Virus record (IMG/VR): IMGVR_UViG_3300021964_009390
Location: 158,462-222,461 of that record
Length of the DNA stretch: 64,000 nucleotides
Strand: one strand, 5' to 3'
The position numbers were made by a program, and so were the translations under genes. Shown here piece after piece: positions 5,663 to 64,000 of the stretch. Under the pieces are notes generated by a model. It saw only the letters and a program-made list of their open reading frames with translations, was not told where the DNA came from and searched no databases. The stretch's first letter is position 1, and every line of letters starts with the position of its first letter.

Positions 5663-6808
5663 ATGTTTGTAAATCCATTAAACCCTACCGGAAACACTTC
5701 ATTTCAGTTCAACAAACCGGCACCTACCACACCACCAACTTCAAAATTACCGGAAAATACACTGCCTAGATTTTTAAATTTCGTTGCTGATTACACCGGA
5801 TGTGGCCATTGGAGAATGTTGTGGCCGGAACAAATACTGAACAGTTACAGAATGTGTGTGATGCAAAGCTCTACCATGATGGTGACAGATCCCAAGCATT
5901 TTTCTGGTGTGAGAACTGTTAGAGTACAGAGACAAGCGAGCCCTACACAGGAAAAATACTTAAATTATTTGAAAAATAATCTCGGTATCCGATTGGTATA
6001 TGATATTGATGATGTATGTTTTGGAGAGGATATTCCACATTATAATCCGTTCCGGACTGCTTTTACAGACCCGGTCATAATTGACGGTATCAAACGTATG
6101 ATGGAACTTTGCGATGAGATGACAGTTACAACTCCAGCTCTTAAAAAATATTATCAAGACAATACAAATCAAAAAAACATAACAGTTATACCAAATTACC
6201 CACCAAGATTCTGGATAGGTAACATGTATAATACCAAGCAAAGAAGTAAAATTTATGACAAGCATGCGAAAAAACCTAGGATACTTTACGCCGGGAGTAG
6301 TTCACATTTTGATATAAAAAATAATAATCAACACATCGATGATTTGTCACATGTGAATAGTTATATAATAAAAACACTCAACAAATATCAATGGGTGTTT
6401 GTAGGAGGGATCCCATACCAATTGAAATCATACGTGAACAGTGGTAAGATTGAGTATCATAAATGGAACCATTTGTATGATTACCCATATGAAATATCTA
6501 AATTAGAAATAACTGCATCGATTGTACCTCTACAAGACAACCAATTCAATCGCGGTAAAAGTGATATAAAATTTTTAGAATGTGCAGCTTTGGGTATCCC
6601 GACTGTGTGTCAAGACATAGGAGTTTACAATAAATGTAAACATTTATTCAAGACAGTAGACTGTTTAGATGAACAGCTCAACACATTACTATCTACAAAG
6701 AAACATTACATGTCAACATGTGATAGAAATCACGCGCATGTGTGTAGTATGTGGTTAGAAAACGAAAACAATAGAAACAAATATTTAAAAATATATCAGG
6801 TTGATTAA
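5663..6808 (+). CDS. GT-B fold glycosyltransferase (GT4-like)
   Basis: GCGHWRM, YDIDD, TVTTPAL, VIPN, ILYAGS.SH, PLQDNQFNRGKSDIKFLECAALGIP donor-binding C-terminal motif. Confidence 0.8.
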   Translation: MFVNPLNPTGNTSFQFNKPAPTTPPTSKLPENTLPRFLNFVADYTGCGHWRMLWPEQILNSYRMCVMQSSTMMVTDPKHFSGVRTVRVQRQASPTQEKYLNYLKNNLGIRLVYDIDDVCFGEDIPHYNPFRTAFTDPVIIDGIKRMMELCDEMTVTTPALKKYYQDNTNQKNITVIPNYPPRFWIGNMYNTKQRSKIYDKHAKKPRILYAGSSSHFDIKNNNQHIDDLSHVNSYIIKTLNKYQWVFVGGIPYQLKSYVNSGKIEYHKWNHLYDYPYEISKLEITASIVPLQDNQFNRGKSDIKFLECAALGIPTVCQDIGVYNKCKHLFKTVDCLDEQLNTLLSTKKHYMSTCDRNHAHVCSMWLENENNRNKYLKIYQVD

Positions 6809-6820
6809 CAGATGTGGTAA

Positions 6821-6828
6821 TATAAATA
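6821..6828 (+). promoter_or_regulatory. T4-type late promoter
   Basis: Perfect TATAAATA, ATG 6 nt downstream. Confidence 0.7.
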
Positions 6829-6833
6829 GTAAC

Positions 6834-7052
6834 ATGCCAACAACTAAAAAAGCAAAAACTACAAAAACTTCAGCCCCAGACTACAAAATCGTACTTGAAG
6901 AAGTGTTAGATCTGAGCTCAGCTCTAGTTAGAGAGATTGACAACATTATGGAGTCACAATTACCACCGGCTCAAGTTGGTAAAGTTTTAGGTGATGTGGT
7001 TTCCGGATTTCAACAGAGACTAGAAGAATATAAAGTATCCGCGAAACTATAA
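6834..7052 (+). CDS. Small hypothetical late protein
   Basis: Track ORF 6801-7052; ATG 6834 lies 6 nt after a perfect TATAAATA (6821-6828). Confidence 0.6.
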   Translation: MPTTKKAKTTKTSAPDYKIVLEEVLDLSSALVREIDNIMESQLPPAQVGKVLGDVVSGFQQRLEEYKVSAKL

Positions 7053-7059
7053 ATTTATA

Positions 7060-13388: not shown

Positions 13389-13389
13389 T

Positions 13390-14061
13390 ATGTGTGGTGT
13401 ATACGGTTCTACTTGTTACAATAGATTTAAAGATCTATACAAATTAAACACAACAAGGGGCAATTTCGCAAACGGTCATGTTTTTGTGAGTGATTCTCAA
13501 GATGGTCGATCTCTACATATATCAAAATCTCCCGGGACTAAAAAATATACTGATGTAATAGATGAGAATATTAAAATACACTTAGGTCATACACAATCCC
13601 CGACCGGTAGTGTAAGAGACTATCATCCATCTACAACACACCCATTCGAGAGCAGAAATTGGATCGTTGGTCATAATGGTGTCATTAATAATTTTGAAAA
13701 ACTAAAACAACAGTATGCACCACATAGCAAATGCAATGTTGACACGAGTATAATACCCTATTTACTAGAGATGTATATAGCTACCCGACATACTGAGCAA
13801 GAAATAACAAATATCGTGAAAAGAGTGTTAGACATGATAAATGGTACGTACGGGTTGTTTATTTTTAATAAAAAATACAACCTCTTGTATGTAGCTAGAT
13901 CTGGAAGCACTCTGTTTTATGACCCTAAGGATGGTAGTTTCAGCTCTACACAGCATGGTAACATGGTGGATCTACCAGAACATACACTGTTTAAAGTCAA
14001 CGGTAACATATATGAACGAGTAGCTAGTCTATCTAATAACTCATCATTTTTAATATTATAA
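13390..14061 (+). CDS. Class II (Ntn) glutamine amidotransferase
   Basis: N-terminal MCG nucleophile, RG, GHT, HPF, HNGVINN, VDTS. Confidence 0.85.
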   Translation: MCGVYGSTCYNRFKDLYKLNTTRGNFANGHVFVSDSQDGRSLHISKSPGTKKYTDVIDENIKIHLGHTQSPTGSVRDYHPSTTHPFESRNWIVGHNGVINNFEKLKQQYAPHSKCNVDTSIIPYLLEMYIATRHTEQEITNIVKRVLDMINGTYGLFIFNKKYNLLYVARSGSTLFYDPKDGSFSSTQHGNMVDLPEHTLFKVNGNIYERVASLSNNSSFLIL

Positions 14062-14765
14062 TGAAAAATAAAAAAATTGAACTTAAACCTATACTCATTG
14101 TGAGCTGTACTCAAAATGAATCATGGAAAGATACAAGATTAGGATCATGTAAAGCCAGCTTGGAAAACCAAGCTAAATTCAAGTTTGTAACAAACAATAA
14201 ACAAGGACTACCTAAATGTTATAATAAATTTTTAACAAAAAAAATAGCAGAAAAACATGATATAATTGTATTTTGTCATGATGATTTATATATAGATGAT
14301 TTAAAATTGCGAGGAAAATTATACAAATCGCTATACGCCGACAAATATGATATTGTCGGCCTCGCCGGTGCTAGTACATGCAAAATAGAACATGGTAAAC
14401 CTACCCTGTGGCATTTGATGAGCGAGCGAGATACATGGAGCGGTACTGTTTTCCACCCGCGTGGTGTTGATACAAATCAAGTGATGTCTACAACGTTCGG
14501 ACCAACTCCATCTAGATGTCTCGTGTTAGATGGTGTGTTTCTTGCAGTGAACATACACCGTGCCCGGGAGAAAAAATGGAAATTTAATGATACATTTGAC
14601 TTTCATCATTATGACATAGCTAGCTGTATTGATGCAAATACCAAGCAATTGAAACTCGGTACATGTATGATACACGCTATTCACGACTCTCCCGGCTTAC
14701 ACTCTATAGAAGACCCAGACTGGCTGTCTAGCCAGGACAAATTTTTAAAGTTGTATGGTGAGTAA
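14061..14765 (+). CDS. GT-A glycosyltransferase (GT2-like)
   Basis: KCYNK, IIVFCHDD (DxD-like), DIVGLAG, VLDGVFLA, FDFHHYDIASC. Confidence 0.8.
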   Translation: MKNKKIELKPILIVSCTQNESWKDTRLGSCKASLENQAKFKFVTNNKQGLPKCYNKFLTKKIAEKHDIIVFCHDDLYIDDLKLRGKLYKSLYADKYDIVGLAGASTCKIEHGKPTLWHLMSERDTWSGTVFHPRGVDTNQVMSTTFGPTPSRCLVLDGVFLAVNIHRAREKKWKFNDTFDFHHYDIASCIDANTKQLKLGTCMIHAIHDSPGLHSIEDPDWLSSQDKFLKLYGE

Positions 14766-16193: not shown

Positions 16194-16850
16194 ATGAACC
16201 TGTATAGATTAGCAGATTTTATTAGATATAACATGCAAGAGGGTCTAGGTTTTAAAGGTAGTATTGCAGAAGAATACTTAAAACGTAATACAAAATACAA
16301 AAATGAAGGTGATGTAAACTTTGAACTGTTGAGAAGTATTGTGAATAGTAGAAAAAAACCTCCGGAACAAGACACTGTATCAATACATGCTAGATTAGGC
16401 GATATACTAAGTCCTCGGAATGCCAATTATATCTCAATGAACAATCTACCATCGTTCCCAGACATTATATTAAAACATAATTTACATAAAAAATATAAAA
16501 ACTGTTCTATATATTATGGTAATCATAAAATAGGAACACCAGGTGTAGCAAACGTTGATAAATCAAAGACCATTTTAAATAACATTGTGACTAATCTAAG
16601 CAATATGGGTCTAGATACAAAAATTATATCAAATTCTGCTGATGAAGATTTTATATCTTTATCAACATGTCTCTGCTACATTTCCGGTATCAGAGGTTTC
16701 GGATGGTTGTCTGCTTCAATAAACCCAAACACAGTTTATTGGGATAATCACAACATACCAAATTTTTCGTGGGAAAGATACCCTGAACAACAAATAAAAA
16801 AATCTCTAATGAAGGGATATAATTACCACCTATCAATTAAAACAACATAG
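16194..16850 (+). CDS. Putative GT11/NodZ-like (fucosyl-type) glycosyltransferase
   Basis: VSIHARLGD resembles the H.R.GD donor-binding motif; DEDFISLSTC..YISGIRGFGWLSASIN resembles the D...MS.C...I...S.FSW.AA.LN motif of GT11-type enzymes. Divergent and short. Confidence 0.45.
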   Translation: MNLYRLADFIRYNMQEGLGFKGSIAEEYLKRNTKYKNEGDVNFELLRSIVNSRKKPPEQDTVSIHARLGDILSPRNANYISMNNLPSFPDIILKHNLHKKYKNCSIYYGNHKIGTPGVANVDKSKTILNNIVTNLSNMGLDTKIISNSADEDFISLSTCLCYISGIRGFGWLSASINPNTVYWDNHNIPNFSWERYPEQQIKKSLMKGYNYHLSIKTT

Positions 16851-20699: not shown

Positions 20700-21021
20700 C
20701 AGAGGAGATGACAAAAAAAAGAGTACCCAACCGGACAAATCTGAAGAGTTATCTAAACAGTTTGACGACGCGTTGACCAATTTTTTAAAAAACCAAGCTA
20801 AAACCAAAAACAAATCTCTAAAAAATTACAAATCATTAGAAAATTTATTAAACCAATATTTAAACAGTTTCATATTGATAGGGTACACACAAGACACTAG
20901 ACAGTTTATAAGTTTAGTGAACGCTAAAAATGAGCAACATGCTGATTCGTTAAGTACCGCATTGAATAAATTTATTGTAAAAAACGCGCAAATTAAAAAT
21001 ATACCACCCGATATATACTGA
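20683..21021 (+). CDS. Hypothetical protein
   Basis: 112-aa ORF in the coupled operon. Confidence 0.55.
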   Translation: MTRENNRGDDKKKSTQPDKSEELSKQFDDALTNFLKNQAKTKNKSLKNYKSLENLLNQYLNSFILIGYTQDTRQFISLVNAKNEQHADSLSTALNKFIVKNAQIKNIPPDIY

Positions 21022-21995
21022 TGAAAAAAATTGCAATCTTCGGTCAAGGCTATGTAGGTACACAGCTAGAAGAATCCGCTCCACAACATGGTGCTCGAGC
21101 TTCTCATAATGATCTTGAAAATGTGTATGAAATAAAAACATATACTAAAAAAGAACACAAATACCACAAAGCTGAAAAATTTATAAAAATTTTAAACCAA
21201 TTCAAACCGGATTATGTAATCAATGCATGTGGATACACGGGTCGACCTAATGTAGATGCATGCGAAACCGACAAGCAAAATTGCTGGAACCTTAATGTGA
21301 ATTTACCGGTAACTATGTCTACTATATGCAGAACATATGATATACCCTTCATACACATAAGTAGCGGTTGTGTATATACAGGATACGATAAACATTATAC
21401 AGAAGAAGATCCCCCTAATTTTGGCATGGGCTCTACAGTAAGTAGTTGGTATAGTAAAACAAAGCATGCTGCAGAAATGCAGTTACAAGACGCTTATGTG
21501 TTTCGTATCCGCATGCCATTCTGTAACAATAACCATGAGAGGAATTTCCTCAACAAAGTATTGAAATATGACCGGTTGATTGAATATAAGAATTCCATGA
21601 CCTCTATTCCAGACTTCATGCGTTTTGTATGGAGATTTATTCACAGAATGGAGCTACAAAACACAGTAGACCTGCAACAATTACCCGGTGAAATGACTCC
21701 AGGTATTTACAACGTCTGCAACCCGGGAGCTATATCCATAAGCGATGTAGTTGAACTATTTAAACAGAACGGGATATCTAACTGCAACTGGTCATTTGTT
21801 GATATGGAATCTCTATCGTTAAAAGCGAATCGTTCCAACTGCTTATTAGATTGTTCTAAAATAGACAGACTGGGACTAGGATTACCTCCCGCGATTGATA
21901 GCTTAACGACATGTGTACAAGAGCTTTGCAAAAAATTATTATGGAAAACCGGATTGCAAGGACCTAAAACTGGTTTGGAGTGGCAAATAAGGTAA
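21021..21995 (+). CDS. NDP-sugar 3,5-epimerase/4-reductase (RmlD / NRS-ER-like SDR)
   Basis: IFGQGYVG Rossmann motif, NACGYTGRPNVDACE, HISSGCVY, catalytic YSKTK, RIRMPF. Confidence 0.85.
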   Translation: MKKIAIFGQGYVGTQLEESAPQHGARASHNDLENVYEIKTYTKKEHKYHKAEKFIKILNQFKPDYVINACGYTGRPNVDACETDKQNCWNLNVNLPVTMSTICRTYDIPFIHISSGCVYTGYDKHYTEEDPPNFGMGSTVSSWYSKTKHAAEMQLQDAYVFRIRMPFCNNNHERNFLNKVLKYDRLIEYKNSMTSIPDFMRFVWRFIHRMELQNTVDLQQLPGEMTPGIYNVCNPGAISISDVVELFKQNGISNCNWSFVDMESLSLKANRSNCLLDCSKIDRLGLGLPPAIDSLTTCVQELCKKLLWKTGLQGPKTGLEWQIR

Positions 21996-30696: not shown

Positions 30697-30726
30697 AAAA
30701 AGCTGTACAATTGTACAGCTTTTTTT
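30697..30726 (+). terminator. Intrinsic terminator (perfect 28-bp palindrome)
   Basis: AAAAAGCTGTACAATTGTACAGCTTTTT followed by further T, just after the 29839-30672 stop. Confidence 0.8.
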
Positions 30727-31676
30727 ATGGATGTTTTGGATATATACCAATAACTATAAATGTGACATTTCTACAAACACCTGATGCTAGAGATTTCTCG
30801 CTGGACCCTACATTTGTAGAATTCAGCAAAGATGATAATGTAGACGTAGCAGTTGTTGGGAACGGTGGTAGCATCACTGGGTTGAGTGAGACTGATATAA
30901 ACACAATAAACAATTGCCGTTTGTTCAGATGCAATTGGGCGTTCAAAGACCCAAGTAAAATTAAAAAGCAATACACATTATATTTCTCACAAGCATATGG
31001 TGCCGCCACTCATGGTATCAGCAGCGAATCGCACCTGGCAGAACAAGTGGACTCATGCATCAACGATGGTACGATGACCGTGTATCGTTACTGGATAGAC
31101 ATACTGTACAACGAGAACCCTTTATGTACATTTGTGAGTCCGAATGGAGTACCAGTGTGGCCCACCACCGGTATACAGATGTTAATGTTCGCAGCGTTTC
31201 AAGTAAACGCACCCGCGGTTCATATTGCTGGTATTGATTTATACTCACATGCTCGACCTGCGCATCAGATGTCCAAACAAGAAACAATGGAATATTTGAA
31301 AAAACATGGCAAACCGTTCAGTGACAGCCGTGATGGTAGCTGTGGTATAACATTACAACGAGTTAATTTAACCTACACAACACCAAGTGACTGGCTATCC
31401 CGGTTGAAACAGTCACACATGACATATCATTTTTTACATGTTGATATTATGTTAATGATGATATGCTTTTACCGTTTACACACCACAAAAACTCGTACAT
31501 ATATATATGAAAGCAAAGTCGTGGAGAAAATACAACAAATCGCCATGGACAATATCGACATGTTGCATGATTATGTGACGAGTTCTTCTAGTTTGGATCT
31601 GGACATAAACAAAAAAAATTGCTATCGTATGTGGAGACTGGTGAACCAAACAGCAAATGACATGTACAATGTATAA
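30711..31676 (+). CDS. Sialyltransferase-fold glycosyltransferase (GT42/GT29-like)
   Basis: VAVVGNGGS...LFRCN...PTTG...IAGIDLY matches the order and spacing of CstII-type motifs GNGPS / FRCN / TSG / SGIDFY. True start uncertain (GTG 30762 possible). Confidence 0.6.
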   Translation: MYSFFYGCFGYIPITINVTFLQTPDARDFSLDPTFVEFSKDDNVDVAVVGNGGSITGLSETDINTINNCRLFRCNWAFKDPSKIKKQYTLYFSQAYGAATHGISSESHLAEQVDSCINDGTMTVYRYWIDILYNENPLCTFVSPNGVPVWPTTGIQMLMFAAFQVNAPAVHIAGIDLYSHARPAHQMSKQETMEYLKKHGKPFSDSRDGSCGITLQRVNLTYTTPSDWLSRLKQSHMTYHFLHVDIMLMMICFYRLHTTKTRTYIYESKVVEKIQQIAMDNIDMLHDYVTSSSSLDLDINKKNCYRMWRLVNQTANDMYNV

Positions 31677-47821: not shown

Positions 47822-47971
47822 ATGATATCTATAACAGTAAACGGGGTGGATTATAAATTACCACCGGAGAAGTTTTCAGTATTGTTAAGTTGGTTACAAT
47901 CTAACGGCGCTATTAAAGTGTTAGAAGCATCAAATCCAGACCAAGACGGGAGGACATTAATAAATGAGTGA
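47822..47971 (+). CDS. 49-aa early ORF not in the ORF track
   Basis: MISITVNGVDYKLPPEKFSVLLSWLQSNGAIKVLEASNPDQDGRTLINE*; ATG 7 nt after TATAAT; overlaps the dut start. Confidence 0.6.
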   Translation: MISITVNGVDYKLPPEKFSVLLSWLQSNGAIKVLEASNPDQDGRTLINE

Positions 47972-56342: not shown

Positions 56343-57119
56343 GTGAAAAATATAACAGTAGTTATACCAATATACAAATTGGACACTCACCGGTATAAAA
56401 ATTTAATGTTCATACTGAATAAACTGTACAGGAAACATAAAATTGTGATTGTGGAACAGATCACCGACTTTTCACACCTTTCATTGCCAGAGATATACAA
56501 TATTAAAAATATAAACCATGTGAAACTTTACAGCGAATGCAAAAACATTAAAAAATGTTGGTTGATAAACATGTCATGCAATTTTGTCAAAACCTCGTTC
56601 ATATGGATAATCGATTGCGATTTTTACATGAACTTTGACACTGTAAAACTCAGTGACGATATGTTAAACAAATATAATTTTATACAACCGTTTGTATACG
56701 CTAGGAATTTGAGTGAATTAGAAACAAAAACGCTACATGACACTGGTCATATTGAAATAAAATATTATGACGGGTTGGAATCCGAGCATCGCCATGTAAA
56801 TGTATACGGTGCGTTAAGTTTTATATTCAATATTAATAAATTCAAACAAATAGGTGGTATGGACGAACAGTATCAGGGATGGGGGTACGAAGATTACGAT
56901 ATATTTCTGAGAATACATGAACAACTCCCTAATGAAAACATATATATCAACAAACAACAGACTGGTATGCATCAGTGGCACCCGGTCATGGAAAACATAG
57001 AAAATCAAGCCAGTAACAACTTAGAAATTTTCCAACAAAAAGACTTCAATTTAACTAAAGTAAATAAAATACTGAAAGCAAAATATTACCAAGATTGGGA
57101 TTTTGGTGATGTGGATTGA
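56343..57119 (+). CDS. GT-A glycosyltransferase (GT2/GT7 galactosyltransferase-like)
   Basis: VVIP, IVIVEQ, IIDCD (DxD), F.QIGGMDEQYQGWGYEDYD, HQWHP. GTG start. Confidence 0.85.
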   Translation: MKNITVVIPIYKLDTHRYKNLMFILNKLYRKHKIVIVEQITDFSHLSLPEIYNIKNINHVKLYSECKNIKKCWLINMSCNFVKTSFIWIIDCDFYMNFDTVKLSDDMLNKYNFIQPFVYARNLSELETKTLHDTGHIEIKYYDGLESEHRHVNVYGALSFIFNINKFKQIGGMDEQYQGWGYEDYDIFLRIHEQLPNENIYINKQQTGMHQWHPVMENIENQASNNLEIFQQKDFNLTKVNKILKAKYYQDWDFGDVD

Positions 57120-57149: not shown

Positions 57150-60100
57150 ATGCCTAACCAACGAACATACTACTCTAGTAACAAAGATATAGACGAGGTA
57201 TCTACTATAAACCCCCTGTCGTATGTGGAGTGGTTAAAATATGAAAATAGTTTTGACAAAAACACAGCTTTTGAACTGTATACTGTATATTTAAACAATT
57301 GGTACACTACTAATACCAAGGTTACAGCAGAACAGCAACAACAATATGTAAGAAACCAATATATTCAATTGTTAAAGCAGATCACACTAGAATATACAAC
57401 TGCTGATGAAAAAAGATTTTTGTCAAACTTAGATTATACAGACAACAAAGATTTAGACGTAGCGTTACCGTTCTTCAGCAAAAAAATCAAACAAATAGCA
57501 ATATACTACGCTAGTCAACGTGAAGAGATAAAGTATTCAAAAATTAAAAACAATCTGAAGGGTAGTGATTTTGGTATGAGTCAAATAATATACAAGCAAT
57601 TTGCTGACACTATCGCTAATGACACACAAATTGTGGAACAACTACAAGACTTAAACTTGACTTTGAACGATGTTTTGTTAAATCTGGAAATATCTGTAGA
57701 AGAGCTGTACGATACAGAGCAAAATTATTATAATATTTCGCCCGGAAGCGACAAAAAAGAATACACAACATTCAACAACTCACCACGTTACAATTATTTT
57801 GACATGTCCATACTACCTACAAGTTCGCGGATGTTCATACAAGAGTTGTACACCCAGGCAGTTATTGATTTGATAAAAGAAGTCCCAGTGATGCTATTAT
57901 CAACCAAAGGTGATGATGCTAATTACGAAAATGAAACACTAGTGTACGCTACCGGTGAGGCAATAGCCATATCCGAAACTGTGACCGGTACCGAACTAGA
58001 TCGGTTGGATGCTAGTGCGTTTATCAACTACACAGACACTGGAGCTTTAAATATAAGTTACGAACAATTAGCATTTCAAAAATATTCCGGGACTGACTAT
58101 TTTTATCTCAGCACTGGTGACAGTTTGACAGACACTATAACCGGTCAATTGTTCACGGCCACTGCTGCGCATAAGAACATTCTCAACAGACATCACCCAA
58201 CAATAGCCAGTGTCACTGGGGAGAATTTGTATAAATTAGAATATTTAGGGGGATTTTTCTTAGGTACCGGTATAGGTCTCGCCAGCTTTGCATCATTTGA
58301 TTTTGAATACAAGTTCAAGCCAGAATTAAACACGGTAATGTATTTTCCAGATCCCCAGGTAGGATCAACCGGTTATTTTGGCGCGTATGAAAAGTTCAAA
58401 GCCCCGGTGCAATACTATGAAAACGTAAATTGGAACAAACAATCTGTAGTAACCACATACAATTATGGCTTGCAATCACAGTTGGATAACATGCCTAGGT
58501 TCACTGCTTACCAGTCATCAGAGCACATACTCAACGAACCTACCGGAGTGTTCCGGTACAATGATGTATATGATTTTTGGACACCTACAGGGCAAAATGT
58601 GTGGCTCAACGAAGATATATATGATAAGCAGCAACAGCAATCGGACATAGACGATAGACAATTACAACTTCACACTGGTCAAAAAATAGTATACAAATGG
58701 AAGACGGATATTTACGGTAACAACTATGCACTAGTGAAAAACAATATCTCTCCAGAAAAAACACCACCGGTTAATACAGCCAGTAATATAACTGAGAGTG
58801 AATATGTTACAAGCACATCTACTAACAAAAGCGCCAACATATCTAAATATGAATGGCATAATAAAACCGAAGGGACCACTCATGGACGAAAAAATTTGTC
58901 AGAACAAAAAGAATCTCCCGGGGAATTGTACATCAGAAACAACACGTTTACTGGTATACATTTAGTAACCGATACAATATTTTCAGATGTGTATCAAAAA
59001 TACGTTATATCCGGGACTGTAGAATATAAAGAACGGACAATAACAATTAGCGATATTGGTGCCGAGATTGTAAGCAATTTAATAGACATTGACATAATAC
59101 AGGACATAATTATATTAGAAACTGATTCATACATAATTTTTGAAAAATTGTCATATGATTACGACACTGGTCGGATATATAGTGACAATAAAAATTATAC
59201 GTTCATTGTAAAAAGGTATTACGGTAACAGTTACAACATGACAGGTAATTGGTGGTTTGATGAAGACAAGCAACGGATCTTAGTATGTCAGACCAATGTA
59301 CACCCGACGTATCAAAACACAAACGACAAAATGATATACATTATTTTATATAATTTTGATATTAATACTTTGAAATTGAGGCAAGCGTACCCGGACCCAG
59401 ACTACACTGCCGCTCAATTGGTATACGAAACAAGTCAGTATTCATTGAGTGCTATACCTAGTGAACACAACATCGTGAAAGTAAAGCCACCCATGTTGAC
59501 ATTCAATAAAGATTCTGAACGTTACAGTGTATCACAATTGCAATTTGATTCCACCCGGAACCCATATTATCTCAAAACAGATTTCCGAATGTACATGGAA
59601 ACAATCGAGCTGATAAGAACTAACTTTTTTAAACACAATTACTTCAGTTACTCGTTAAACAGTTACAACGAGTCTGTTGAGGATTATTTTTACGAGACAA
59701 ACACAAGTATAACTACACCAACATGGTACCATGGAACCTCTGATGATGTAGTGTATATGGGTGCAACTGAAGCCGCAGGAGCACCAGTAGCTATTCCAGG
59801 CTACAGCAACAGCGTGTGGACATACGGTATAGACTCGGACAGCTACGAGTCTGAACGTGATATAATATTATCATTCGATTATTGTATGTTTGGCAATGCC
59901 GCGCCGTTTGGGTTAAGTGTATTGTTTTACAATTCAAGAAACAGTACAAACACTGGGTATGAAACAGTCGCATCAGGCGGTCTTGGCCCGGCTTTCAATT
60001 ATTTGAACGATACAACTACCGGTTCCGGAACTCAAGCTAGTTCGACCGGTTTGCAACACGGTCATGCTTGTGTGGCATTGGATGCAACCGGTAATTACGG

Positions 60101-60587
60101 TAATTCGTCGCTCACCAGCGGAGAGACACCAATTGCTGATAGTGTAGTAGTGTCCGGTCCATATGAATCTGCTATGACACAACGTGATGTGACTGTGTTA
60201 CCAACAAAATTTAAATTGTATGACTCATCAATAGATCAAGACAGTTTAAAATTCACCAGATGCCGGGTGACTCTAACGGACCTGGGTCGACGCGTGTTTG
60301 TAGACATGATGAACCCGGAATCAGACTCCCGCTACACCAGAATAAGTGACACCCAAATAAGTGATTACTACCCGACCGGTCCAGCTGGTACCACAACCAC
60401 AACCACAACCACAACCACAACCAGTAGCGGTGGTGGTACAATCGTACCGTATTACACCATACCAACCAAATTGAATGTATCATTAGCTTTCAACAATAGC
60501 AACCCAATCGGTGGGATATGTGCCATCCGGGACATCACAATCACCGGTAGTAACGCTTCACGTGCCGGTCTCGCAGTAACTGTCTAA
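57150..60587 (+). CDS. Large virion structural protein with probable C-terminal lectin-like domain and poly-Thr tract
   Basis: 1145 aa; late motif upstream; C-terminal beta-sandwich (FGLSVLFY...GGLG...VALDATGNYG) resembles ConA/L-type lectins; 11 consecutive Thr. Confidence 0.55.
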   Translation: MPNQRTYYSSNKDIDEVSTINPLSYVEWLKYENSFDKNTAFELYTVYLNNWYTTNTKVTAEQQQQYVRNQYIQLLKQITLEYTTADEKRFLSNLDYTDNKDLDVALPFFSKKIKQIAIYYASQREEIKYSKIKNNLKGSDFGMSQIIYKQFADTIANDTQIVEQLQDLNLTLNDVLLNLEISVEELYDTEQNYYNISPGSDKKEYTTFNNSPRYNYFDMSILPTSSRMFIQELYTQAVIDLIKEVPVMLLSTKGDDANYENETLVYATGEAIAISETVTGTELDRLDASAFINYTDTGALNISYEQLAFQKYSGTDYFYLSTGDSLTDTITGQLFTATAAHKNILNRHHPTIASVTGENLYKLEYLGGFFLGTGIGLASFASFDFEYKFKPELNTVMYFPDPQVGSTGYFGAYEKFKAPVQYYENVNWNKQSVVTTYNYGLQSQLDNMPRFTAYQSSEHILNEPTGVFRYNDVYDFWTPTGQNVWLNEDIYDKQQQQSDIDDRQLQLHTGQKIVYKWKTDIYGNNYALVKNNISPEKTPPVNTASNITESEYVTSTSTNKSANISKYEWHNKTEGTTHGRKNLSEQKESPGELYIRNNTFTGIHLVTDTIFSDVYQKYVISGTVEYKERTITISDIGAEIVSNLIDIDIIQDIIILETDSYIIFEKLSYDYDTGRIYSDNKNYTFIVKRYYGNSYNMTGNWWFDEDKQRILVCQTNVHPTYQNTNDKMIYIILYNFDINTLKLRQAYPDPDYTAAQLVYETSQYSLSAIPSEHNIVKVKPPMLTFNKDSERYSVSQLQFDSTRNPYYLKTDFRMYMETIELIRTNFFKHNYFSYSLNSYNESVEDYFYETNTSITTPTWYHGTSDDVVYMGATEAAGAPVAIPGYSNSVWTYGIDSDSYESERDIILSFDYCMFGNAAPFGLSVLFYNSRNSTNTGYETVASGGLGPAFNYLNDTTTGSGTQASSTGLQHGHACVALDATGNYGNSSLTSGETPIADSVVVSGPYESAMTQRDVTVLPTKFKLYDSSIDQDSLKFTRCRVTLTDLGRRVFVDMMNPESDSRYTRISDTQISDYYPTGPAGTTTTTTTTTTTSSGGGTIVPYYTIPTKLNVSLAFNNSNPIGGICAIRDITITGSNASRAGLAVTV
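60390..60422 (+). repeat. (ACCACA)n hexamer encoding poly-Thr
   Basis: 5.5 perfect copies, 11 Thr. Confidence 0.9.
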
Positions 60588-60588: not shown

Positions 60589-63174
60589 ATGAACGATAAA
60601 AAATTAAAGTTACCAGAATATACAATCAATTTGTTACACGACAAAAATCCACCTAGTGGAACACAGGTGTATAGTGATGCGTTCGTACTCAAAGGACCAC
60701 ACGATGTAAAATTTCAACTCACAGGAGACAACAATTTTACAAAAATAATATACAATTTCGATTATGTACAGCAATGCGAAACATCCACTTTACCAGCTAG
60801 CGGTCAGCATGTCATAGAAGCTTCAAGACACAACAACACTAATTTTTTATTAGACCCGAGTCAACAGACAATCGAGACTAGATTGTACCCTGACAAATAT
60901 CAATATAAAAAGACATACTACCCAGGTCTGACTACAATAGATGAAGATTTTAACACGGTGGTGCACCAATTGAGTGTGACCATCGCCCAACCCTCGTTCC
61001 ATGAATTTGTAGACGATGTCAATTTAGCCGGTGTCCGTGCTTTCACTAACGTTGACAACGAGCGAGGAAAAGCCATTATATTGTTAGAAGATGTACGCAA
61101 CGAATGGATTGTACCAGTAACGCTGTACGGTGAAGGAGAATTCACCGGTGTGTTGGATCTGGGTAACGCCATATACGGGCAGATAAAGTTTGATATATGT
61201 TTGAGACGTGCTCCCTATGATAATATCAATCCAGAGGGTGTAGAGGTAATAGGTGGTGGTATATTGGAGCAAGATGCATTTTTAGGCAGTGTAAAATACG
61301 GTACATATCAAAACGCGATAGAAGGGTTAGATTTGAGCGGCGCGGTCAAAGACGAGTTTACATTGACCAACACCGGACAATACATATTGCACGTAACCGA
61401 CGTGACATCCCCCGGTATACCGTTCTTCATGGACACTGAGTCGTTGATAGGTCCATACTCACCACTGGACAGTGGCTGCGAAAACGAACGAACCGCGGAT
61501 GTGTACTATGTGGTACCCGAGATTGTTGATCTAATGGATGCAATCAACGGAACTGGCAAATACTCCGGTGGTTTACCCACCACGACTATAGATGATGCGG
61601 ACCAAATAACCATCACCAACACCAGCGCCAACAACCCAAATTTAAAAGTTGATCTAGTAGCATCCACCAAAATAGCGCAACTCGAGGTTGTGTCAGGATA
61701 CGGAGATTTGAATGCAACACCAGTGACATTCACACCAACGTTGATGGGTACACAGAGCACACAGCCGGTGAAACTGGTGAATAATGGTACCTGCCCGGTG
61801 AAAGTATTTGATATTGTACCATACACAACAAACGCTGCCGGTGACAAATTATCAGTAGCAACATCCCCAGAAATAGTACCGGACAGTTTCAGACTACCGT
61901 TCGTGATGTTACCAGGTGAGACTCGTACAATAGATGCTATTTTCAACCCACAGACATATGTTGATACTGTGGACGGTGGTAGTGAAGATGTTGTGTCACA
62001 TTCTGATTACAGTGGTCTCAAAGTGGATAAAAAAGTGGTATGGGAGATAGTTAGTAACGGTTTCAACGCTGTTAGACATAATGTGTTCTTGGAAGGTGAT
62101 GTGTACACCACAACAACAACTACTACAACCACAACAACAACTACTACAACAACAACCACAACTACTACAACAACAACCACAACTAACACCGGTACAACTA
62201 CCACAACCACTAGTACTACAACCACTACCACAACCACTTGCCCGGCCATCCGCGAAGAAGTGTATGTACGATGGCAGTACGAACCGGTGTATGTAGTGGA
62301 AGGTCAAAACGCCATAGTGCATGTGATCAGAGACCCTCGAAGCGATTACACTGGTGCTTTCTCCGTGGACTATGCTACATCTGATCTGACAGCAATATCT
62401 ACTGGCCCCAACAGAGACTATTTGAGCCTCACCGGGACTTTGAATTTCTCGGCAGGTGAAATGTCCAAGAGTTTAAACATACCAACATATTATATGGGTG
62501 GTAGTACATTAACCGGGATTGATGCGAAAATAACCAAACTAGAAACTGCGGAAGCTTTCAATATCACGTTGAGTAACGTGGTTGCTGCAGATTCATGCAC
62601 CAACAAGTATTTTATCGACCCGGCCAACCCAGTGGGATATGATGCAGCAAGCGTGACACCCACACACCAGGTGGTTATACTAGACCGTTTCACATATTCA
62701 GTCAGTAGCGTTGGCCTAGGAGGTGGAGGAGGAGCATCTCCATGTACATTCACTTCGGTTGTTGCAACACTAGACATGTCCGCTTTGACGCTCACAGTGG
62801 ATAGCGCATCTAGCAACACAGACAAAATTATCAAGGTGTACAACAGCGACACTGGTGTGTTACTAGGTATAATCCCGGCCCAGTCTTCCGGGGTGCTAGA
62901 CGTGTCCGGTCAGTCTGTAAGTGGCAGCAACACTTTGAACATAACATACGAGAGCTGCGGCTGTTGTGTGGTGGAGAGCTACGCATATCCATGTTCTTGG
63001 GTGAGTGTAACAGGAGACATTGAATGCTGTAACATAACCAATGTAACAGGAGCTATGTCATGTTGCAGTATATCTCATGTGTCTGGTGACATGTCATGTT
63101 GCAGCATAAGCGGTGTTGCCGGCTCCATGTCATGTTGCAGCATAAGCGGCGTTGCCGGTTCCATGTCATGTTAA
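60589..63174 (+). CDS. Adhesin-like tail protein: Ig-like domain, Thr linker, Calx-beta domain, Cys-pair repeats
   Basis: VKLVNNGTCPVKV...LPGETRTI..IFNP (ASH/Ig-like); ~44-residue Thr tract; V.EG...V.V.R...SVDYATSD.TA...DY....GTL.F.AGE.SK (Calx-beta). Confidence 0.65.
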   Translation: MNDKKLKLPEYTINLLHDKNPPSGTQVYSDAFVLKGPHDVKFQLTGDNNFTKIIYNFDYVQQCETSTLPASGQHVIEASRHNNTNFLLDPSQQTIETRLYPDKYQYKKTYYPGLTTIDEDFNTVVHQLSVTIAQPSFHEFVDDVNLAGVRAFTNVDNERGKAIILLEDVRNEWIVPVTLYGEGEFTGVLDLGNAIYGQIKFDICLRRAPYDNINPEGVEVIGGGILEQDAFLGSVKYGTYQNAIEGLDLSGAVKDEFTLTNTGQYILHVTDVTSPGIPFFMDTESLIGPYSPLDSGCENERTADVYYVVPEIVDLMDAINGTGKYSGGLPTTTIDDADQITITNTSANNPNLKVDLVASTKIAQLEVVSGYGDLNATPVTFTPTLMGTQSTQPVKLVNNGTCPVKVFDIVPYTTNAAGDKLSVATSPEIVPDSFRLPFVMLPGETRTIDAIFNPQTYVDTVDGGSEDVVSHSDYSGLKVDKKVVWEIVSNGFNAVRHNVFLEGDVYTTTTTTTTTTTTTTTTTTTTTTTTTTNTGTTTTTTSTTTTTTTTCPAIREEVYVRWQYEPVYVVEGQNAIVHVIRDPRSDYTGAFSVDYATSDLTAISTGPNRDYLSLTGTLNFSAGEMSKSLNIPTYYMGGSTLTGIDAKITKLETAEAFNITLSNVVAADSCTNKYFIDPANPVGYDAASVTPTHQVVILDRFTYSVSSVGLGGGGGASPCTFTSVVATLDMSALTLTVDSASSNTDKIIKVYNSDTGVLLGIIPAQSSGVLDVSGQSVSGSNTLNITYESCGCCVVESYAYPCSWVSVTGDIECCNITNVTGAMSCCSISHVSGDMSCCSISGVAGSMSCCSISGVAGSMSC
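62107..62238 (+). repeat. Degenerate ACN repeat encoding a Thr linker
   Basis: ~44 codons, nearly all Thr. Confidence 0.9.
63019..63174 (+). repeat. 36-bp repeats encoding 12-aa Cys-Cys units
   Basis: ATGTCATGTT recurs at 63055, 63091, 63127, 63163; diverged unit at 63019. Confidence 0.9.
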
Positions 63175-63205
63175 AAGCAAACTAATCATGTTAAAAGCAA
63201 ACTAA
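63166..63205 (+). repeat. 20-bp direct tandem repeat spanning the stop codon
   Basis: TCATGTTAAAAGCAAACTAA x2. Confidence 0.9.
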
Positions 63206-63229
63206 ACACGTTTAAAATGAAGAAATCGT

Positions 63230-63237
63230 AATAAATA
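63230..63237 (+). promoter_or_regulatory. Late promoter of the 63264 gene
   Basis: AATAAATA upstream of the Thr/Ser-rich ORF. Confidence 0.5.
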
Positions 63238-63263
63238 ATTGTTATAGATTCTATACCACCACT

Positions 63264-64000
63264 ATGAGCTGTACAAATTGTCAAGTTACGATAACATCTG
63301 TGACCGGAACCCCGGAAAAATACGACCTTCGCAAAGTTAATGCAGATGGAAGTACCGGTGACCCGTTTACCATTGTAGGATCCGGGTTGAACGCAGTGGA
63401 TTTTGAATTGACCGAGCTACCATGGACCATTTACGTAGGGGATTCAGGGGATGCTCATTGGGTTCGCGACTTGGGTGGTGTGAATACAGACAGTGGGTCG
63501 TGGGGACCTGGTGATGGTCTGACAGTCACTGTACGTGTACAGAACCATGATGATGCAAATTGCTACTACGATGTGGAATACACATGTGTATCAGTCACCA
63601 CTACAACAACCACGACCAGTACTACAACCAGCACCACAACTTCAACTTCGACCAGTACTTCAACTTCGACCAGTACTACAACTAGCACCACGACCAGTAC
63701 TACAACCAGCACCACGACGTCGACTACGACCAGTACTTCAACTTCGACCAGTACCACAACTTCAACTTCGACCAGTACCACAACTTCAACTTCGACAACA
63801 ACCAGTACCACAACTTCAACTTCGACCAGTACCACAACTTCAACTTCGACAACAACCAGTACTACAACTAGCACCACGACCAGTACCACAACTTCAACTT
63901 CGACAACAACTTCGACAACAACTTCGACAACAACTTCGACAACAACTTCGACAACAACTTCGACAACAACTTCGACAACAACTTCGACAACAACTTCGAC
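63264..64000 (+). CDS. Mucin-like Thr/Ser-rich late protein (partial; runs off the window end; not in the ORF track)
   Basis: Hand translation MSCTNCQVTITSVTGTPEKYDLRK...VEYTCVSV followed by >130 Thr/Ser codons with no stop; AATAAATA at 63230-63237. Confidence 0.75.
   Translation, partial: MSCTNCQVTITSVTGTPEKYDLRKVNADGSTGDPFTIVGSGLNAVDFELTELPWTIYVGDSGDAHWVRDLGGVNTDSGSWGPGDGLTVTVRVQNHDDANCYYDVEYTCVSVTTTTTTTSTTTSTTTSTSTSTSTSTSTTTSTTTSTTTSTTTSTTTSTSTSTSTTTSTSTSTTTSTSTTTSTTTSTSTSTTTSTSTTTSTTTSTTTSTTTSTSTTTSTTTSTTTSTTTSTTTSTTTSTTTSTTTS
63595..64000 (+). repeat. Thr/Ser-coding repeats ending in a perfect 12-bp array
   Basis: Mixed ACN/TCN/AGY codons; (ACTTCGACAACA) x8 plus a partial copy from 63897 to the window end (TSTT units). 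Confidence 0.9.

What the first reader, a model, noticed from the sequence alone, without database searches (positions are those of the whole stretch)
5663..64000. Candidate virion O-glycosylation system: dispersed glycosyltransferases plus mucin-like Thr/Ser tracts on tail proteins
Seen: up to five GTs of different folds (GT-B 5663; GT2-like 14061; GT11-like 16194; sialyltransferase-fold 30711; GT2/GT7 56343) and an NDP-deoxysugar epimerase/reductase (21021). Two GTs are embedded among structural genes, one directly between the large baseplate proteins. The three following late proteins carry pure Thr/Ser tracts: 11 Thr (60390), ~44 Thr (62107) and >130 Thr/Ser (63595 to the window end). Established: Thr/Ser-rich linkers are typical O-glycan acceptors; some mycobacteriophages and giant viruses glycosylate virion proteins with their own GTs; none of these GTs resembles T4 alpha/beta-glucosyltransferases for hmC DNA. 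Inference: the phage may build a glycan-coated, mucin-like tail appendage for stiffening, protease shielding or adhesion. DNA or host-surface modification remain alternatives.
Basis: inference. Interest (0 to 1): 0.78.

Follow-up and report, generated by a model that had tools for sequence, protein, structure and literature searches.

The report
Sugar-adding enzyme beside threonine-tract tail proteins
An uncultured marine T4-like phage keeps a sugar-transferring enzyme inside its tail-baseplate operon next to tail proteins with pure threonine stretches, so it may sugar-coat its own tail, but no chemistry has tested this.

Summary
The window is the last 64 kb of a 222-kb estuarine T4-like phage contig. 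It carries five glycosyltransferase-like genes of different folds and an NDP-6-deoxyhexose epimerase/reductase. Three consecutive late genes have Thr or Thr/Ser tracts at the stated coordinates.

The "one dispersed system" reading is only partly supported. The solid core is GT-A gene 56343.
- It is fixed between two large baseplate genes in every relative of one clade (16 distinct sequences, down to 29% identity, catalytic motifs invariant).
- The next-but-one protein always has a 43–49-residue, almost pure Thr linker between an Ig-like domain and a Calx-beta domain.
- 49 more distant relatives lack the GT and the 60589-like protein; none of their loci shows a Thr/Ser run of 8 or more.
- On the tree this is a single evolutionary event, so the association is compatible with a link, not proof of one.

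A CstII-like GT is likewise fixed beside tube and sheath genes. The GT2_5-like gene belongs to a QueC–amidotransferase block in the replication module. The GT11-like gene is accessory.

Virion O-glycosylation is the best explanation (about 0.4). Host-surface modification, the usual reading for marine myophage GTs, remains a live rival.

The parts
56343..57119 (+). Soluble GT-A glycosyltransferase (258 aa) inside the baseplate operon. This is the core candidate enzyme.
   Evidence: Pfam Glyco_tranf_2_2 (1.6e-9) and Glyco_transf_7C (2.5e-9), both above cut-off. The AF2 model has pLDDT 81.5 and a GT-A fold, with top matches K4CP chondroitin polymerase, TarP, ppGalNAc-Ts and b4GalT7 at TM about 0.5-0.57. 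The D91-x-D93, GWGxED183-184 and H210/H213 motifs are invariant. The gaps to the flanking genes are 3 nt and 30 nt.
60589..63174 (+). 861-aa tail protein: N-terminal beta-rich region, PapD/ASH-like Ig domain, poly-Thr linker, Calx-beta domain, Cys-rich 12-residue repeats. This is the most likely acceptor.
   Evidence: Translation. Calx-beta at residues 569-632. Residues about 364-508 match PapD/ASH-like Ig domains at Z 10-11 in a low-confidence model. Homologs occur only in the GT-positive clade.
62107..62238 (+). Poly-Thr linker (44 residues, 41 Thr) of the 60589 protein.
   Evidence: In 7 lineages the linker is 43-49 residues with 35-41 Thr. It is encoded by mixed ACA/ACC/ACT codons that differ between lineages, and it is always bounded by '..G..Y' and 'CP..V..WQ'.
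57150..60587 (+). 1145-aa baseplate or tail protein, used here as the 'anchor' family. It has a T11SS tract at nt 60390-60428 near the C-terminus.
   Evidence: Translation. The family was found in 80 or more loci. The tract is present only in the window and its closest relative L003.
63264..64000 (+). Partial ORF: a 111-aa N-terminal domain followed by at least 134 residues of (TTTS/TS)n from nt 63597. It is cut by the contig end.
   Evidence: Homologs in L007 and L008 are complete (281 and 248 aa) with only TTT(T) at the tract site. The tract is expanded in the window and L003. L005 has a separate TS-rich ORF at its contig end.
50272..56339 (+). Upstream baseplate genes: gp25-like (50272-50793), gp6-like wedge (50801-52771) and a 1188-aa PKD-domain protein (52773-56339).
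   Evidence: PHROG 219 baseplate wedge, 4e-42. PKD domains. GPW_gp25 in syntenic loci.
30711..31676 (+). CstI/CstII-like (GT42-like) transferase fixed upstream of a tube paralog and the sheath gene. The likely true start is at 30762.
   Evidence: The family profile hits PDB Cst-I/Cst-II at E 9e-7 to 2e-6 over about 155 residues. 3 of 16 family members hit Pfam CST-I. Synteny terminase(-)/unknown/[methyltransferase]/this gene/Phage_TTP_2/sheath is kept in L086-L089.
21021..21995 (+). NDP-4-keto-6-deoxyhexose 3,5-epimerase/4-reductase-like enzyme (probable NDP-L-rhamnose synthase).
   Evidence: Pfam RmlD_sub_bind, 3.7e-19. PDB 4qqr at 2e-28 and 7jid at 4.5e-22. Below the bacterial rmlD equivalog cut-off. 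Conserved in L091 and L093.
14061..14765 (+). Glyco_tranf_2_5-like GT-A. It forms a block with QueC (12678-13388) and a class-II amidotransferase (13390-14061). It probably does not belong to the virion module.
   Evidence: homologs carry PF13712. (QueC 2.4e-59, GATase). (block conserved in L091-L093).
16194..16850 (+). GT11-like (fucosyltransferase-like) accessory gene between the gp41-like helicase and a DHH protein.
   Evidence: Present in the window and L095, absent in L091-L093.
5663..6808 (+). GT-B-like glycosyltransferase between the gp46-like gene and the DNA polymerase.
   Evidence: PHROG 7162, 6.6e-28. Weak Pfam Glyco_trans_1_2 and 1_4 hits. Distant homologs are annotated as GTs in phi92-like coliphages and Streptomyces phages.

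Best explanation
One clade of marine and estuarine T4-like phages has acquired a tail module. It consists of a small soluble GT-A glycosyltransferase gene fixed between two large baseplate genes and, two genes downstream, a multi-Ig-domain tail protein. In that protein an Ig-like domain and a Calx-beta domain are joined by a nearly pure threonine linker of about 44 residues.

The most likely mechanism is as follows. The GT is made with the late tail proteins and O-glycosylates the Thr linker in the host cytoplasm before or during baseplate assembly. In this phage it would also act on the newer T11 and >130-residue Thr/Ser tracts of the neighbouring proteins. Elongation of the glycan may come from the CstII-like transferase that is fixed next to the tube and sheath genes, using phage-made NDP-6-deoxyhexose. 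The result would be an extended, stiff, protease-resistant, mucin-like stalk that holds the distal domains away from the baseplate.

Shown: gene content, folds, synteny, tract conservation and the co-distribution. Inferred: that the GT acts on protein, that the Thr tracts are its acceptor, and the role of any other GT.
For: (1) The GT is a bona fide GT-A with invariant DxD, GWGxED and His motifs in 16 distinct sequences down to 29% identity. It is therefore a maintained, active enzyme.
(2) It lies 3 nt after and 30 nt before large baseplate genes. It keeps exactly this position in all 19 clade loci that have upstream sequence.
(3) In all 9 loci that cover the site, the 60589-like protein has the Thr linker at the same domain boundary. 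In a tenth, L002, the tract starts at the same position but is cut by the contig end. In the 7 distinct lineages whose codons were read, the linker is 43-49 residues with 35-41 Thr, in mixed codons that differ between lineages. That pattern means selection on Thr identity and on length, not slippage.
(4) 49 more distant relatives that share the anchor gene lack the GT and the 60589-like protein. None of their fetched loci (up to 10 kb each side; 32 have at least 2.5 kb downstream) has any [TS] run of 8 or more.
(5) The GT and the tract protein sit on opposite sides of an ancestral gene, so they are not one hitch-hiking cassette.
(6) In the window, [TS] runs longer than 7 occur only in the three genes after the GT.
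(7) A second GT (CstII-like) is also fixed in a late structural cluster. In L088 and L089 a Methyltransf_24 gene lies directly upstream of it.
(8) Precedent: mycobacteriophages glycosylate capsid and tail-tube proteins with their own GTs (Freeman et al. 2023, as summarised in PMC12363180).
(9) Next to poly-Thr genes in unrelated IMG/VR contigs, 6 of 61 nearest ORFs are Glycos_transf_2, against 1 of 40 farther ORFs. This is suggestive only.
Against: There is no chemical evidence at all. The GT/tract association is a single event on the tree (one clade, 100/100), so shared ancestry alone explains it.

The GT fold is generic. Its best matches are polysaccharide synthases and teichoic-acid or lipid-linked-glycan GTs. 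ppGalNAc-Ts appear only among many equal hits, and the protein has no lectin or peptide-binding domain.

Poly-Thr coding tracts are common in viral and marine contigs, and most have no GT next door.

The survey enrichment is not significant (one-sided p=0.15) and has no proper background control.

GTs inside tail-fibre regions of marine myophages have been explained as host O-chain modifiers (PMC7029224).

The model of the candidate acceptor protein is poor (pLDDT 48.9).
Confidence: 0.4

Rival explanations
1. Host-envelope modification. The GTs, including 56343, together with the deoxysugar enzyme remodel host LPS, capsule or S-layer glycans during infection, for superinfection exclusion or to prevent adsorption of progeny to debris. 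The Thr tracts are then plain unglycosylated spacers.
For: This is the standard reading for multi-GT marine myophages. Pelagimyophage host-recognition clusters hold GTs next to tail-fibre genes, and cyanomyophages carry up to 13 GTs plus NDP-sugar epimerases (PMC7029224, PMC12801897). The nearest folds of GT 56343 are polysaccharide or teichoic-acid GTs. The GT11-like gene behaves as an accessory 'moron'.
Against: A host-surface modifier would be expected early and in variable regions. GT 56343 is instead wedged at 3 nt and 30 nt between baseplate genes, and it has been held there across 29-61% sequence identity. This reading does not explain why the GT and the Thr-linker protein appear together, or why the linker stays nearly pure Thr at a fixed length. 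No flippase, polymerase or lipid-carrier GT was found in the window.
Confidence: 0.28
2. Mixed functions with no single system. The replication-module GTs (GT-B 5663; GT2_5-like 14061 with QueC and the amidotransferase; perhaps GT11-like 16194) act on DNA or nucleotide-derived substrates. Only the late-cluster GTs concern the virion or the cell surface.
For: The QueC-GATase-GT2_5 block is tight and conserved (ATGA overlap at 14061). GT-B 5663 lies between the gp46/47-like genes and the DNA polymerase. A dUTPase/dCTP-deaminase-like gene is present. Phage GTs that hypermodify DNA are diverse (bioRxiv 10.1101/2023.12.21.572611, listed).
Against: No hit to T4 alpha/beta-GT families and no hydroxymethylase, TET-like or DpdA-like gene was found among the window ORFs scanned; about 158 kb of the genome was not examined. 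Glycosylated 7-deazaguanine is not a known modification (my knowledge). The GT2_5 family is very widespread on long viral contigs (622 homologs), and its link to QueC outside this lineage was not tested.
Confidence: 0.35
3. The Thr tracts are functional on their own and never glycosylated, acting as a rigid or elastic spacer, a beta-rich self-association strip or a hinge. GT 56343 has some unrelated late function, for example as a virion-borne enzyme acting on the host surface at adsorption.
For: Linker length is conserved at 43-49 residues, which suits a ruler. Poly-Thr tracts are frequent in viral ORFs with no adjacent GT. AF2 predicts the tract as unstructured.
Against: Ordinary spacers drift in composition (P, G, S, A). 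Here Thr is held at 35-41 of 43-49 positions across about 41-47% identical proteins. Long unmodified Ser/Thr-rich tracts in other systems are usually O-glycan acceptors (established knowledge; for example streptococcal Ser/Thr-rich disordered regions, PMC11092751).
Confidence: 0.2

Closest known systems
Mycobacteriophage virion glycosylation (Che8, Corndog, Myrna; Freeman et al. 2023, Cell Host Microbe 31:1216, as summarised in PMC12363180 and cited in PMC12582341)
   Same: Phage-encoded cytoplasmic GTs are proposed to modify the phage's own structural proteins. GT genes are associated with the structural genome. A glycan coat on exposed virion parts is the outcome.
   Different: In mycobacteriophages the glycosylation was shown by mass spectrometry, on capsid and tail-tube proteins of siphophages and myophages of Actinobacteria. 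Here nothing has been shown chemically. The host is presumably a Gram-negative marine bacterium. The candidate acceptors are long internal homopolymeric Thr linkers in baseplate-peripheral proteins. GT 56343 found no relative in the deposited-phage collection by tblastn, so it shows no detectable sequence relation to any mycobacteriophage GT there.
Giant-virus autonomous glycosylation (Mimivirus fibrils, chlorovirus capsid; review PMC4691112)
   Same: Several virus-encoded GTs of different folds occur together with virus-encoded NDP-sugar synthesis, including a UDP-L-rhamnose-synthase-type enzyme. The nearest solved relatives of 21021 are of this type. The nearest viral structural neighbours of GT 56343 include giant-virus GT-A proteins.
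   Different: Giant viruses infect eukaryotes, and their glycans and acceptor proteins are experimentally known. Here the virus is a tailed phage and the acceptor is inferred.
GTs in the 'host recognition cluster' of pelagimyophages and cyanomyophages (PMC7029224; PMC12801897)
   Same: These are marine T4-like phages with several GTs and deoxysugar enzymes, some placed among tail-fibre genes.
   Different: Those GTs lie in hypervariable regions, are mostly GT8/GT2/GT11/GT25, and were read as LPS O-chain or DNA modifiers. No link to Ser/Thr tracts was reported; the term 'threonine' does not occur in PMC7029224. GT 56343 is instead positionally fixed within the conserved gp25-gp6 baseplate operon of one clade.
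Mucin-type O-glycosylation by polypeptide GalNAc-transferases (GT27), and bacterial Ser/Thr-rich-region O-glycosylation
   Same: The catalytic domain is GT-A with a Gal/GalNAc-T (Glyco_transf_7C) motif. Dense Ser/Thr tracts are the substrate. An extended, protease-resistant rod is the product.
   Different: GT 56343 has DxD rather than DxH and no ricin lectin domain. It is only one of many equally distant GT-A matches (TM about 0.5). The tracts lack proline.
Cytoplasmic flagellin O-glycosylation by Maf/FlmG-type and CstII-like nonulosonate transferases (e.g. PMC7591256)
   Same: A soluble transferase related to the sialyltransferase/MptE-like fold modifies Ser/Thr of a structural filament protein in the cytoplasm before assembly. 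The 30711 family shows the GNG(G/P)S and RCN motifs aligned to Cst-I/II.
   Different: No CMP-nonulosonate synthesis genes were seen in the window. The match covers only the N-terminal nucleotide-binding half. The acceptor is unknown.

Membership tests
GT-A fold glycosyltransferase (Pfam Glyco_tranf_2_2 / Glyco_transf_7C), for 56343 | Family HMM score above the curated threshold | tested here: met
   38.1 bits against a cut-off of 27.3, and 37.1 bits against 23.
GT-A fold glycosyltransferase, for 56343 | Rossmann-like GT-A fold with a DxD metal/nucleotide-sugar motif | tested here: met
   AF2 model with pLDDT 81.5 and pTM 0.83. At least 500 PDB GT-A matches at E<=1e-3. D91-x-D93 is invariant in the clade.
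GT27 polypeptide GalNAc-transferase (mucin-type initiator), for 56343 | DxH Mn-binding motif plus a C-terminal ricin-type lectin domain | tested here: not met
   The motif is D-C-D. The protein is 258 aa with no extra domain. ppGalNAc-T1/T2/T10 match only at TM 0.49-0.57, no better than polysaccharide GTs.
GT27 / protein O-GT in general, for 56343 | Transfers sugar to Ser/Thr of a polypeptide | not testable with these tools
   Needs an enzyme assay or co-expression with mass spectrometry.
GT42 CstI/CstII-type sialyltransferase, for 30711 | Sequence-profile relation to solved Cst-I/Cst-II, including the N-terminal GNG-x-S and RCN motifs | tested here: met
   Profile A2 against PDB: 2p2v at 9e-7 and 1ro7/2x62/2drj at about 1.5e-6 over about 145-155 profile positions, with the motifs aligned.
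GT42 CstI/CstII-type sialyltransferase, for 30711 | The protein itself reaches the Pfam CST-I model. A catalytic His and a CMP-nonulosonate donor are present. | tested here: inconclusive
   No Pfam hit for the window protein; 3 of 16 family members hit CST-I and 2 hit GT29. An invariant His223 exists, but its equivalence to the Cst catalytic His was not aligned. No CMP-sugar synthesis genes were found in the window.
GT11 alpha-1,2-fucosyltransferase, for 16194 | Pfam PF01531 above threshold | tested here: not met
   14.3 bits against a cut-off of 23.9, E=0.025, C-terminal motif only. The profile of 10 homologs finds no solved GT.
GT11-like fold, for 16194 | HxRRGD-type motif and a GT-B-variant fold as in GT11/23/65/68 | tested here: inconclusive
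   H65, R67 and D70 are invariant. The ESM-atlas model has TM 0.61-0.62 to GT11 clusters and a feature score of 0.96. Both are leads, not tests.
Glyco_tranf_2_5 (PF13712), for 14061 | Membership by homology to proteins that carry the family | tested here: met
   622 homologs in all. Nearly all of the 120 listed (44-84% identity) carry PF13712. The window protein alone gives no hit.
Phage virion-glycosylation system (mycobacteriophage type) | Phage-encoded GT gene(s) associated with structural genes | tested here: met
   GT 56343 lies inside the baseplate operon. The Cst-like 30711 lies beside the tube and sheath genes. Both positions are conserved.
Phage virion-glycosylation system (mycobacteriophage type) | Glycan demonstrated on virion proteins and dependent on the phage GT | not testable with these tools
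   The phage is uncultured, and no proteomic or staining data are available.
Mucin-like domain | Long Ser/Thr-dominated, low-complexity, disordered tract | tested here: met
   41 of 44 residues are Thr. The third tract is at least 134 residues of pure T/S. The tract is predicted as coil with pLDDT about 30. There is no Pro, unlike classic PTS domains.
Mucin-like domain | Dense O-glycosylation of the tract | not testable with these tools
   Requires glycoproteomics.
T4 alpha/beta-glucosyltransferase (DNA hmC glucosylation) | Sequence match to the T4 AGT/BGT families and an hmC pathway | tested here: not met
   Neither family appears among the Pfam hits of any of the five GTs, at E up to 0.01 for 56343 and up to 5 for the other four. 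No hydroxymethylase was found among the window ORFs scanned. The rest of the genome was not examined.
NDP-4-keto-6-deoxyhexose 3,5-epimerase/4-reductase (UDP/dTDP-L-rhamnose synthase type), for 21021 | SDR RmlD-type domain over its full length, and closest solved relatives of that activity | tested here: met
   PF04321 at 3.7e-19 over residues 4-300. 4qqr at 2.2e-28 and 7jid at 4.5e-22. Below the bacterial rmlD equivalog cut-off, 67 against 224 bits. The sugar nucleotide used is unknown.

The most novel reading that the evidence does not exclude
A clade of marine T4-like phages builds mucin-like, O-glycosylated stalks on baseplate-peripheral proteins. The dedicated glycosyltransferase is inherited together with its poly-Thr acceptor. 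This would be the first virion glycosylation outside actinobacteriophages and giant viruses. It would also mean that at least some of the many glycosyltransferases found beside tail-fibre genes in oceanic myophages decorate the virion rather than the host's LPS.
Probability: 0.33. Interest if true: 0.8.

Novelty: new variant of a known kind. Interest (0 to 1): 0.6.

Why it matters
Glycosyltransferases are among the commonest 'auxiliary' genes of oceanic myophages. They are routinely filed as host-LPS or DNA modifiers without any test. A GT fixed in a baseplate operon, and always accompanied by a conserved Thr-only linker, gives a concrete and cheap test case. It needs two genes and one co-expression experiment to ask whether tailed phages of Gram-negative marine hosts glycosylate their own tails.

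If they do, several things follow:
- how host-recognition modules are annotated would change;
- it would explain why assemblies of these phages break at (ACN)n repeats;
- phage adsorption, resistance to proteases and grazers, and particle stickiness in seawater would all be affected;
- a new soluble protein O-glycosyltransferase with a simple homopolymer acceptor would become available as a tool.

Tried and rejected
- DNA and tblastn searches of the baseplate region, GT 56343, the 57150 protein and GT 14061 against deposited phages found nothing. Only the sheath (36-41% to Vibrio and Synechococcus myophages) and GT-B 5663 (about 25-29% to phi92-like and Streptomyces phages) had matches. There is therefore no cultured close relative to consult.
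- Single-sequence PDB searches of 14061, 16194 and 30711 gave only noise. The profile of the GT11-like family also found no solved GT.
- The fold searches of GT 56343 (PDB, Swiss-Prot AFDB, BFVD) did not single out any acceptor class. I therefore dropped the idea that it is specifically ppGalNAc-T-like.
- The model of the 60589 protein was poor (pLDDT 48.9). Only the Ig-like domain before the linker could be named.
- I tried to recover the rest of the 63264 gene by searching IMG/VR for its 12-bp repeat. Only the same contig end came back.
- Laying Logan contigs on the region showed only that all assemblies break at the three tracts and that (ACN)n is hugely abundant.
- TATAAATA late-promoter-like sites are not enriched: 13 against 7.8 expected, and 3 of 100 shuffles reach 13. 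I did not use them.
- A survey of unrelated poly-Thr genes in IMG/VR for neighbouring GTs gave a non-significant trend (6/61 against 1/40, p=0.15). I could not tell which ORFs were the GTs with in-sandbox HMM or hhalign runs.
- The co-occurrence test is perfect but collapses to one event on the tree.

Full report
**What the window is.** GT 56343 and the 57150 protein retrieve, at 100% identity, IMG/VR contig IMGVR_UViG_3300021964_009390 (222,461 bp) and metagenome contig Ga0222718_10000012 (228,717 bp). In both, the match lies at the contig end, so window position 64000 is the end of the assembly. The gene content is that of a T4-like myophage:
- UvsW-like helicase, gp47/gp46-like nuclease pair, family-B DNA polymerase, UvsX/RecA, gp41-like DnaB helicase, gp32, RNaseH, primase and clamp loader;
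- large terminase, neck protein, sheath, tube, and gp25-like and gp6-like baseplate proteins.

No cultured phage is close. The sheath is 36-41% identical to Vibrio and Synechococcus myophages over its C-terminal third, and the baseplate region has no match at all. The same sequence occurs in several estuary and marine metagenomes.

**Checking the observation.** All three tracts are real and at the stated coordinates:
- T11SS at residues 1081-1093 of the 57150 product;
- a 44-residue tract with 41 Thr at residues 507-550 of the 60589 product;
- at least 134 residues of pure Thr/Ser from nt 63597 to the contig end in the ORF starting at 63264.

No other ORF in the window has a [TS] run longer than 7.

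The enzyme assignments hold, with graded confidence:
- **56343** is a clear GT-A. Two Pfam families score above threshold, the model has pLDDT 81.5, and there are hundreds of GT-A structural matches.
- **5663** is a probable GT-B (PHROG 7162 at 6.6e-28).
- **14061** gives no Pfam hit itself, but nearly all of its 120 listed homologs (622 in all) carry Glyco_tranf_2_5.
- **30711** gives no hit itself, but its family profile finds the Campylobacter Cst-I/Cst-II structures at about 1e-6 with the GNG-x-S and RCN motifs aligned.
- **16194** is the weakest. It has a sub-threshold GT11 hit, an invariant H-x-R-x-x-D motif and language-model/structure similarity to GT11 clusters, but no solved-structure hit.
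- **21021** is an RmlD-type SDR. Its nearest solved relatives are a 3,5-epimerase/4-reductase and a UDP-L-rhamnose synthase.

**The core: a GT fixed in the baseplate operon.** The order of genes is gp25-like, gp6-like, a 1188-aa PKD protein, GT 56343, the 1145-aa 'anchor' protein, the 861-aa protein and the Thr/Ser ORF. The intergenic gaps are 7, 1, 3, 30, 1 and 89 nt.

Homologs of the GT (42-56% identical) were found on four public contigs. In each, the GT sits in the same slot. Scans of IMG/VR and of JGI metagenomes with the anchor family brought in about 80 loci. An HMM of the GT family finds a GT directly upstream of the anchor in all 19 loci of one clade that have upstream sequence. It finds none in the other clades. 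Across 16 distinct GT sequences, down to 29% identity to the alignment's reference sequence, the DxD, GWGxED and two His positions are invariant. The enzyme is therefore under selection as an enzyme.

**The acceptor candidate.** Homologs of the 60589 protein occur only in the GT-positive clade. In all nine loci that cover the site they carry a Thr tract at the same domain boundary, and in L002 the tract begins there but the contig ends. In the seven distinct lineages whose codons were read:
- the tract is 43-49 residues long with 35-41 Thr and a few Ser;
- it is encoded by mixtures of ACA, ACC and ACT that differ from lineage to lineage;
- it is flanked by the conserved '..G..Y' end of the preceding domain and the 'CP..V..WQ' start of a Calx-beta domain.

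These proteins are only about 41-47% identical overall. Composition and length are thus held by selection at the protein level. Replication slippage would give uniform codons and variable length.

The low-confidence model shows a PapD/ASH-like Ig sandwich just before the linker (Z 10-11). It predicts the tract itself as coil.

The other two tracts are young. The T11 tract exists only in the window and its nearest relative L003. The 63264 homologs of L007 and L008 are complete proteins of 281 and 248 aa with just TTT(T) at the tract site.

**The co-occurrence test and its limit.** The outcome is perfect:
- GT-positive loci with data are all tract-positive;
- the 49 GT-negative loci have no [TS] run of 8 or more in any ORF of the fetched locus, and 32 of them have at least 2.5 kb downstream.

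However, a maximum-likelihood tree of the anchor N-terminus puts all GT-positive loci in one clade (100/100), which needs only one change. The association is therefore a single evolutionary event. It fails to refute the link but does not prove it.

Two points add some weight. First, the GT and the tract protein lie on opposite sides of an ancestral gene, so they did not arrive as one cassette. Second, both have been retained throughout a deep clade.

To look for independent replicates I scanned IMG/VR for (ACN)24. At least 120 contigs matched, and 65 have an ORF that reads the stretch as poly-Thr. Among the nearest ORFs, 6 of 61 are Glycos_transf_2. One more is polysialyltransferase-like and one is a sugar O-methyltransferase. 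Among farther ORFs, 1 of 40 is Glycos_transf_2. The trend points the right way but is not significant (one-sided p=0.15), and it lacks a genome-wide background.

**The other GTs.**
- *Cst-like gene 30711.* This is the only other GT with conserved structural synteny: terminase on the opposite strand, an unknown gene, in some relatives a Methyltransf_24 gene, then this gene, a tube paralog and the sheath. It could extend or cap a glycan. Alternatively, like Maf/FlmG enzymes, it could act directly on Ser/Thr. No CMP-sugar pathway was seen in the window.
- *GT2_5-like gene 14061.* It overlaps the stop codon of a class-II amidotransferase that follows QueC. The QueC-GATase-GT-helicase block is conserved in three relatives. 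This points to the replication and DNA-modification module, not the virion.
- *GT11-like gene 16194.* It is present in the window and one relative but absent from three others at the same site, so it is an accessory gene.
- *GT-B 5663.* It sits between the gp46-like gene and the DNA polymerase.

The picture of one five-enzyme virion system is therefore not supported. At most two GTs plus the deoxysugar enzyme can reasonably be tied to the virion.

**Comparison with what is known.** Virion glycosylation by phage-encoded GTs has been shown for mycobacteriophages, on capsid and tail-tube proteins (Freeman et al. 2023, as summarised in PMC12363180 and cited in PMC12582341), and for giant viruses (PMC4691112). 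Marine T4-like phages are known to carry many GTs. In pelagimyophages some lie among tail-fibre genes, but they were interpreted as modifiers of host O-chains (PMC7029224) or of DNA and the cell wall (PMC12801897). In my full-text searches I found no report that links such GTs to Ser/Thr tracts in tail proteins.

GT 56343 is not a member of the mucin-initiating GT27 family. It has DxD rather than DxH, no lectin domain, and no privileged structural similarity to that family.

**Verdict.** The best-supported mechanism is that GT 56343 O-glycosylates the conserved Thr linker of the 60589 protein, and in this phage also the expanded neighbouring tracts, during late assembly. The product would be a mucin-like stalk on a peripheral tail protein (confidence about 0.4). 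Host-surface modification (about 0.28) and an unglycosylated ruler-type linker with an unrelated GT (about 0.2) remain open. DNA or nucleotide-linked roles are likely for the replication-module GTs.

The finding is a new variant of a known kind, resting on inference. It is directly testable with two cloned genes.

Noticed in passing
window 12678-14765: QueC (7-cyano-7-deazaguanine synthase), a stand-alone class-II glutamine amidotransferase and the GT2_5-like gene form a tight block with an ATGA overlap at 14061. The block is conserved in relatives L091-L093. This suggests a 7-deazaguanine DNA-modification pathway with an attached GT of unknown role. No DpdA-like gene was seen among the window ORFs scanned.
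   Followed up: partly
window about 62990-63174 (C-terminus of the 60589 product) and 63264: The protein ends in Cys-rich 12-residue repeats (CCxIxxVxGxxx). The copy number varies from 1 to 4 among homologs. The next gene begins with a similar MSC.NC motif. The function is unknown; metal or disulfide knots, or an assembly interface, are possibilities.
   Followed up: partly
window 60383-60437, 62107-62238 and 63597-64000; L002, L003, L005, L015: Every assembly of this lineage breaks at the poly-Thr/TS coding DNA. (ACN)n attracts thousands-fold summed contig depth in estuary metagenomes. The true length and C-terminal domain of the 63264 product are therefore unknown, and such genes are probably under-assembled in general.
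   Followed up: partly
window 21021-21995: The SDR is closer to a 3,5-epimerase/4-reductase (4qqr) and a UDP-L-rhamnose synthase (7jid) than to the bacterial RmlD equivalog model. From memory these entries are a plant and a mimivirus enzyme. No partner 4,6-dehydratase is present in the window.
   Followed up: partly
window 47964-48677: A dUTPase/dCTP-deaminase-like gene (237 aa) sits between the tail and clamp-loader genes. It may bear on nucleotide-pool editing for modified DNA.
   Followed up: no
window 16194-16850 compared with L091-L093 and L095: The GT11-like gene shows presence/absence polymorphism at one site, between the gp41-like helicase and a DHH protein, among phages whose flanking genes are 70-80% identical.
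   Followed up: yes
L005 5231-8112 and 8154-8543: In this relative the 60589 homolog is split shortly after the Thr tract into a 609-aa ORF and a 334-aa Calx-beta ORF. A further ORF that is Thr/Ser-rich from its first residues runs into the contig end.
   Followed up: no
They occur in large ORFs of phages and giant viruses. Nearest neighbours include Glycos_transf_2 (6 of 61) and 2OG-Fe(II)/TauD oxygenases (4 of 61). The oxygenases hint at other tract modifications.
   Followed up: partly
window 31685-32260, 35043-35714, 35808-36650: There are three tube-like genes. Two match PHROG 45 (tail tube). The homolog of the third is Phage_TTP_2 in relatives, and that gene directly follows the Cst-like GT.
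   Followed up: no
window 38485-43023: A 1512-aa ORF in the tail module has no Pfam or PHROG match at all.
   Followed up: no
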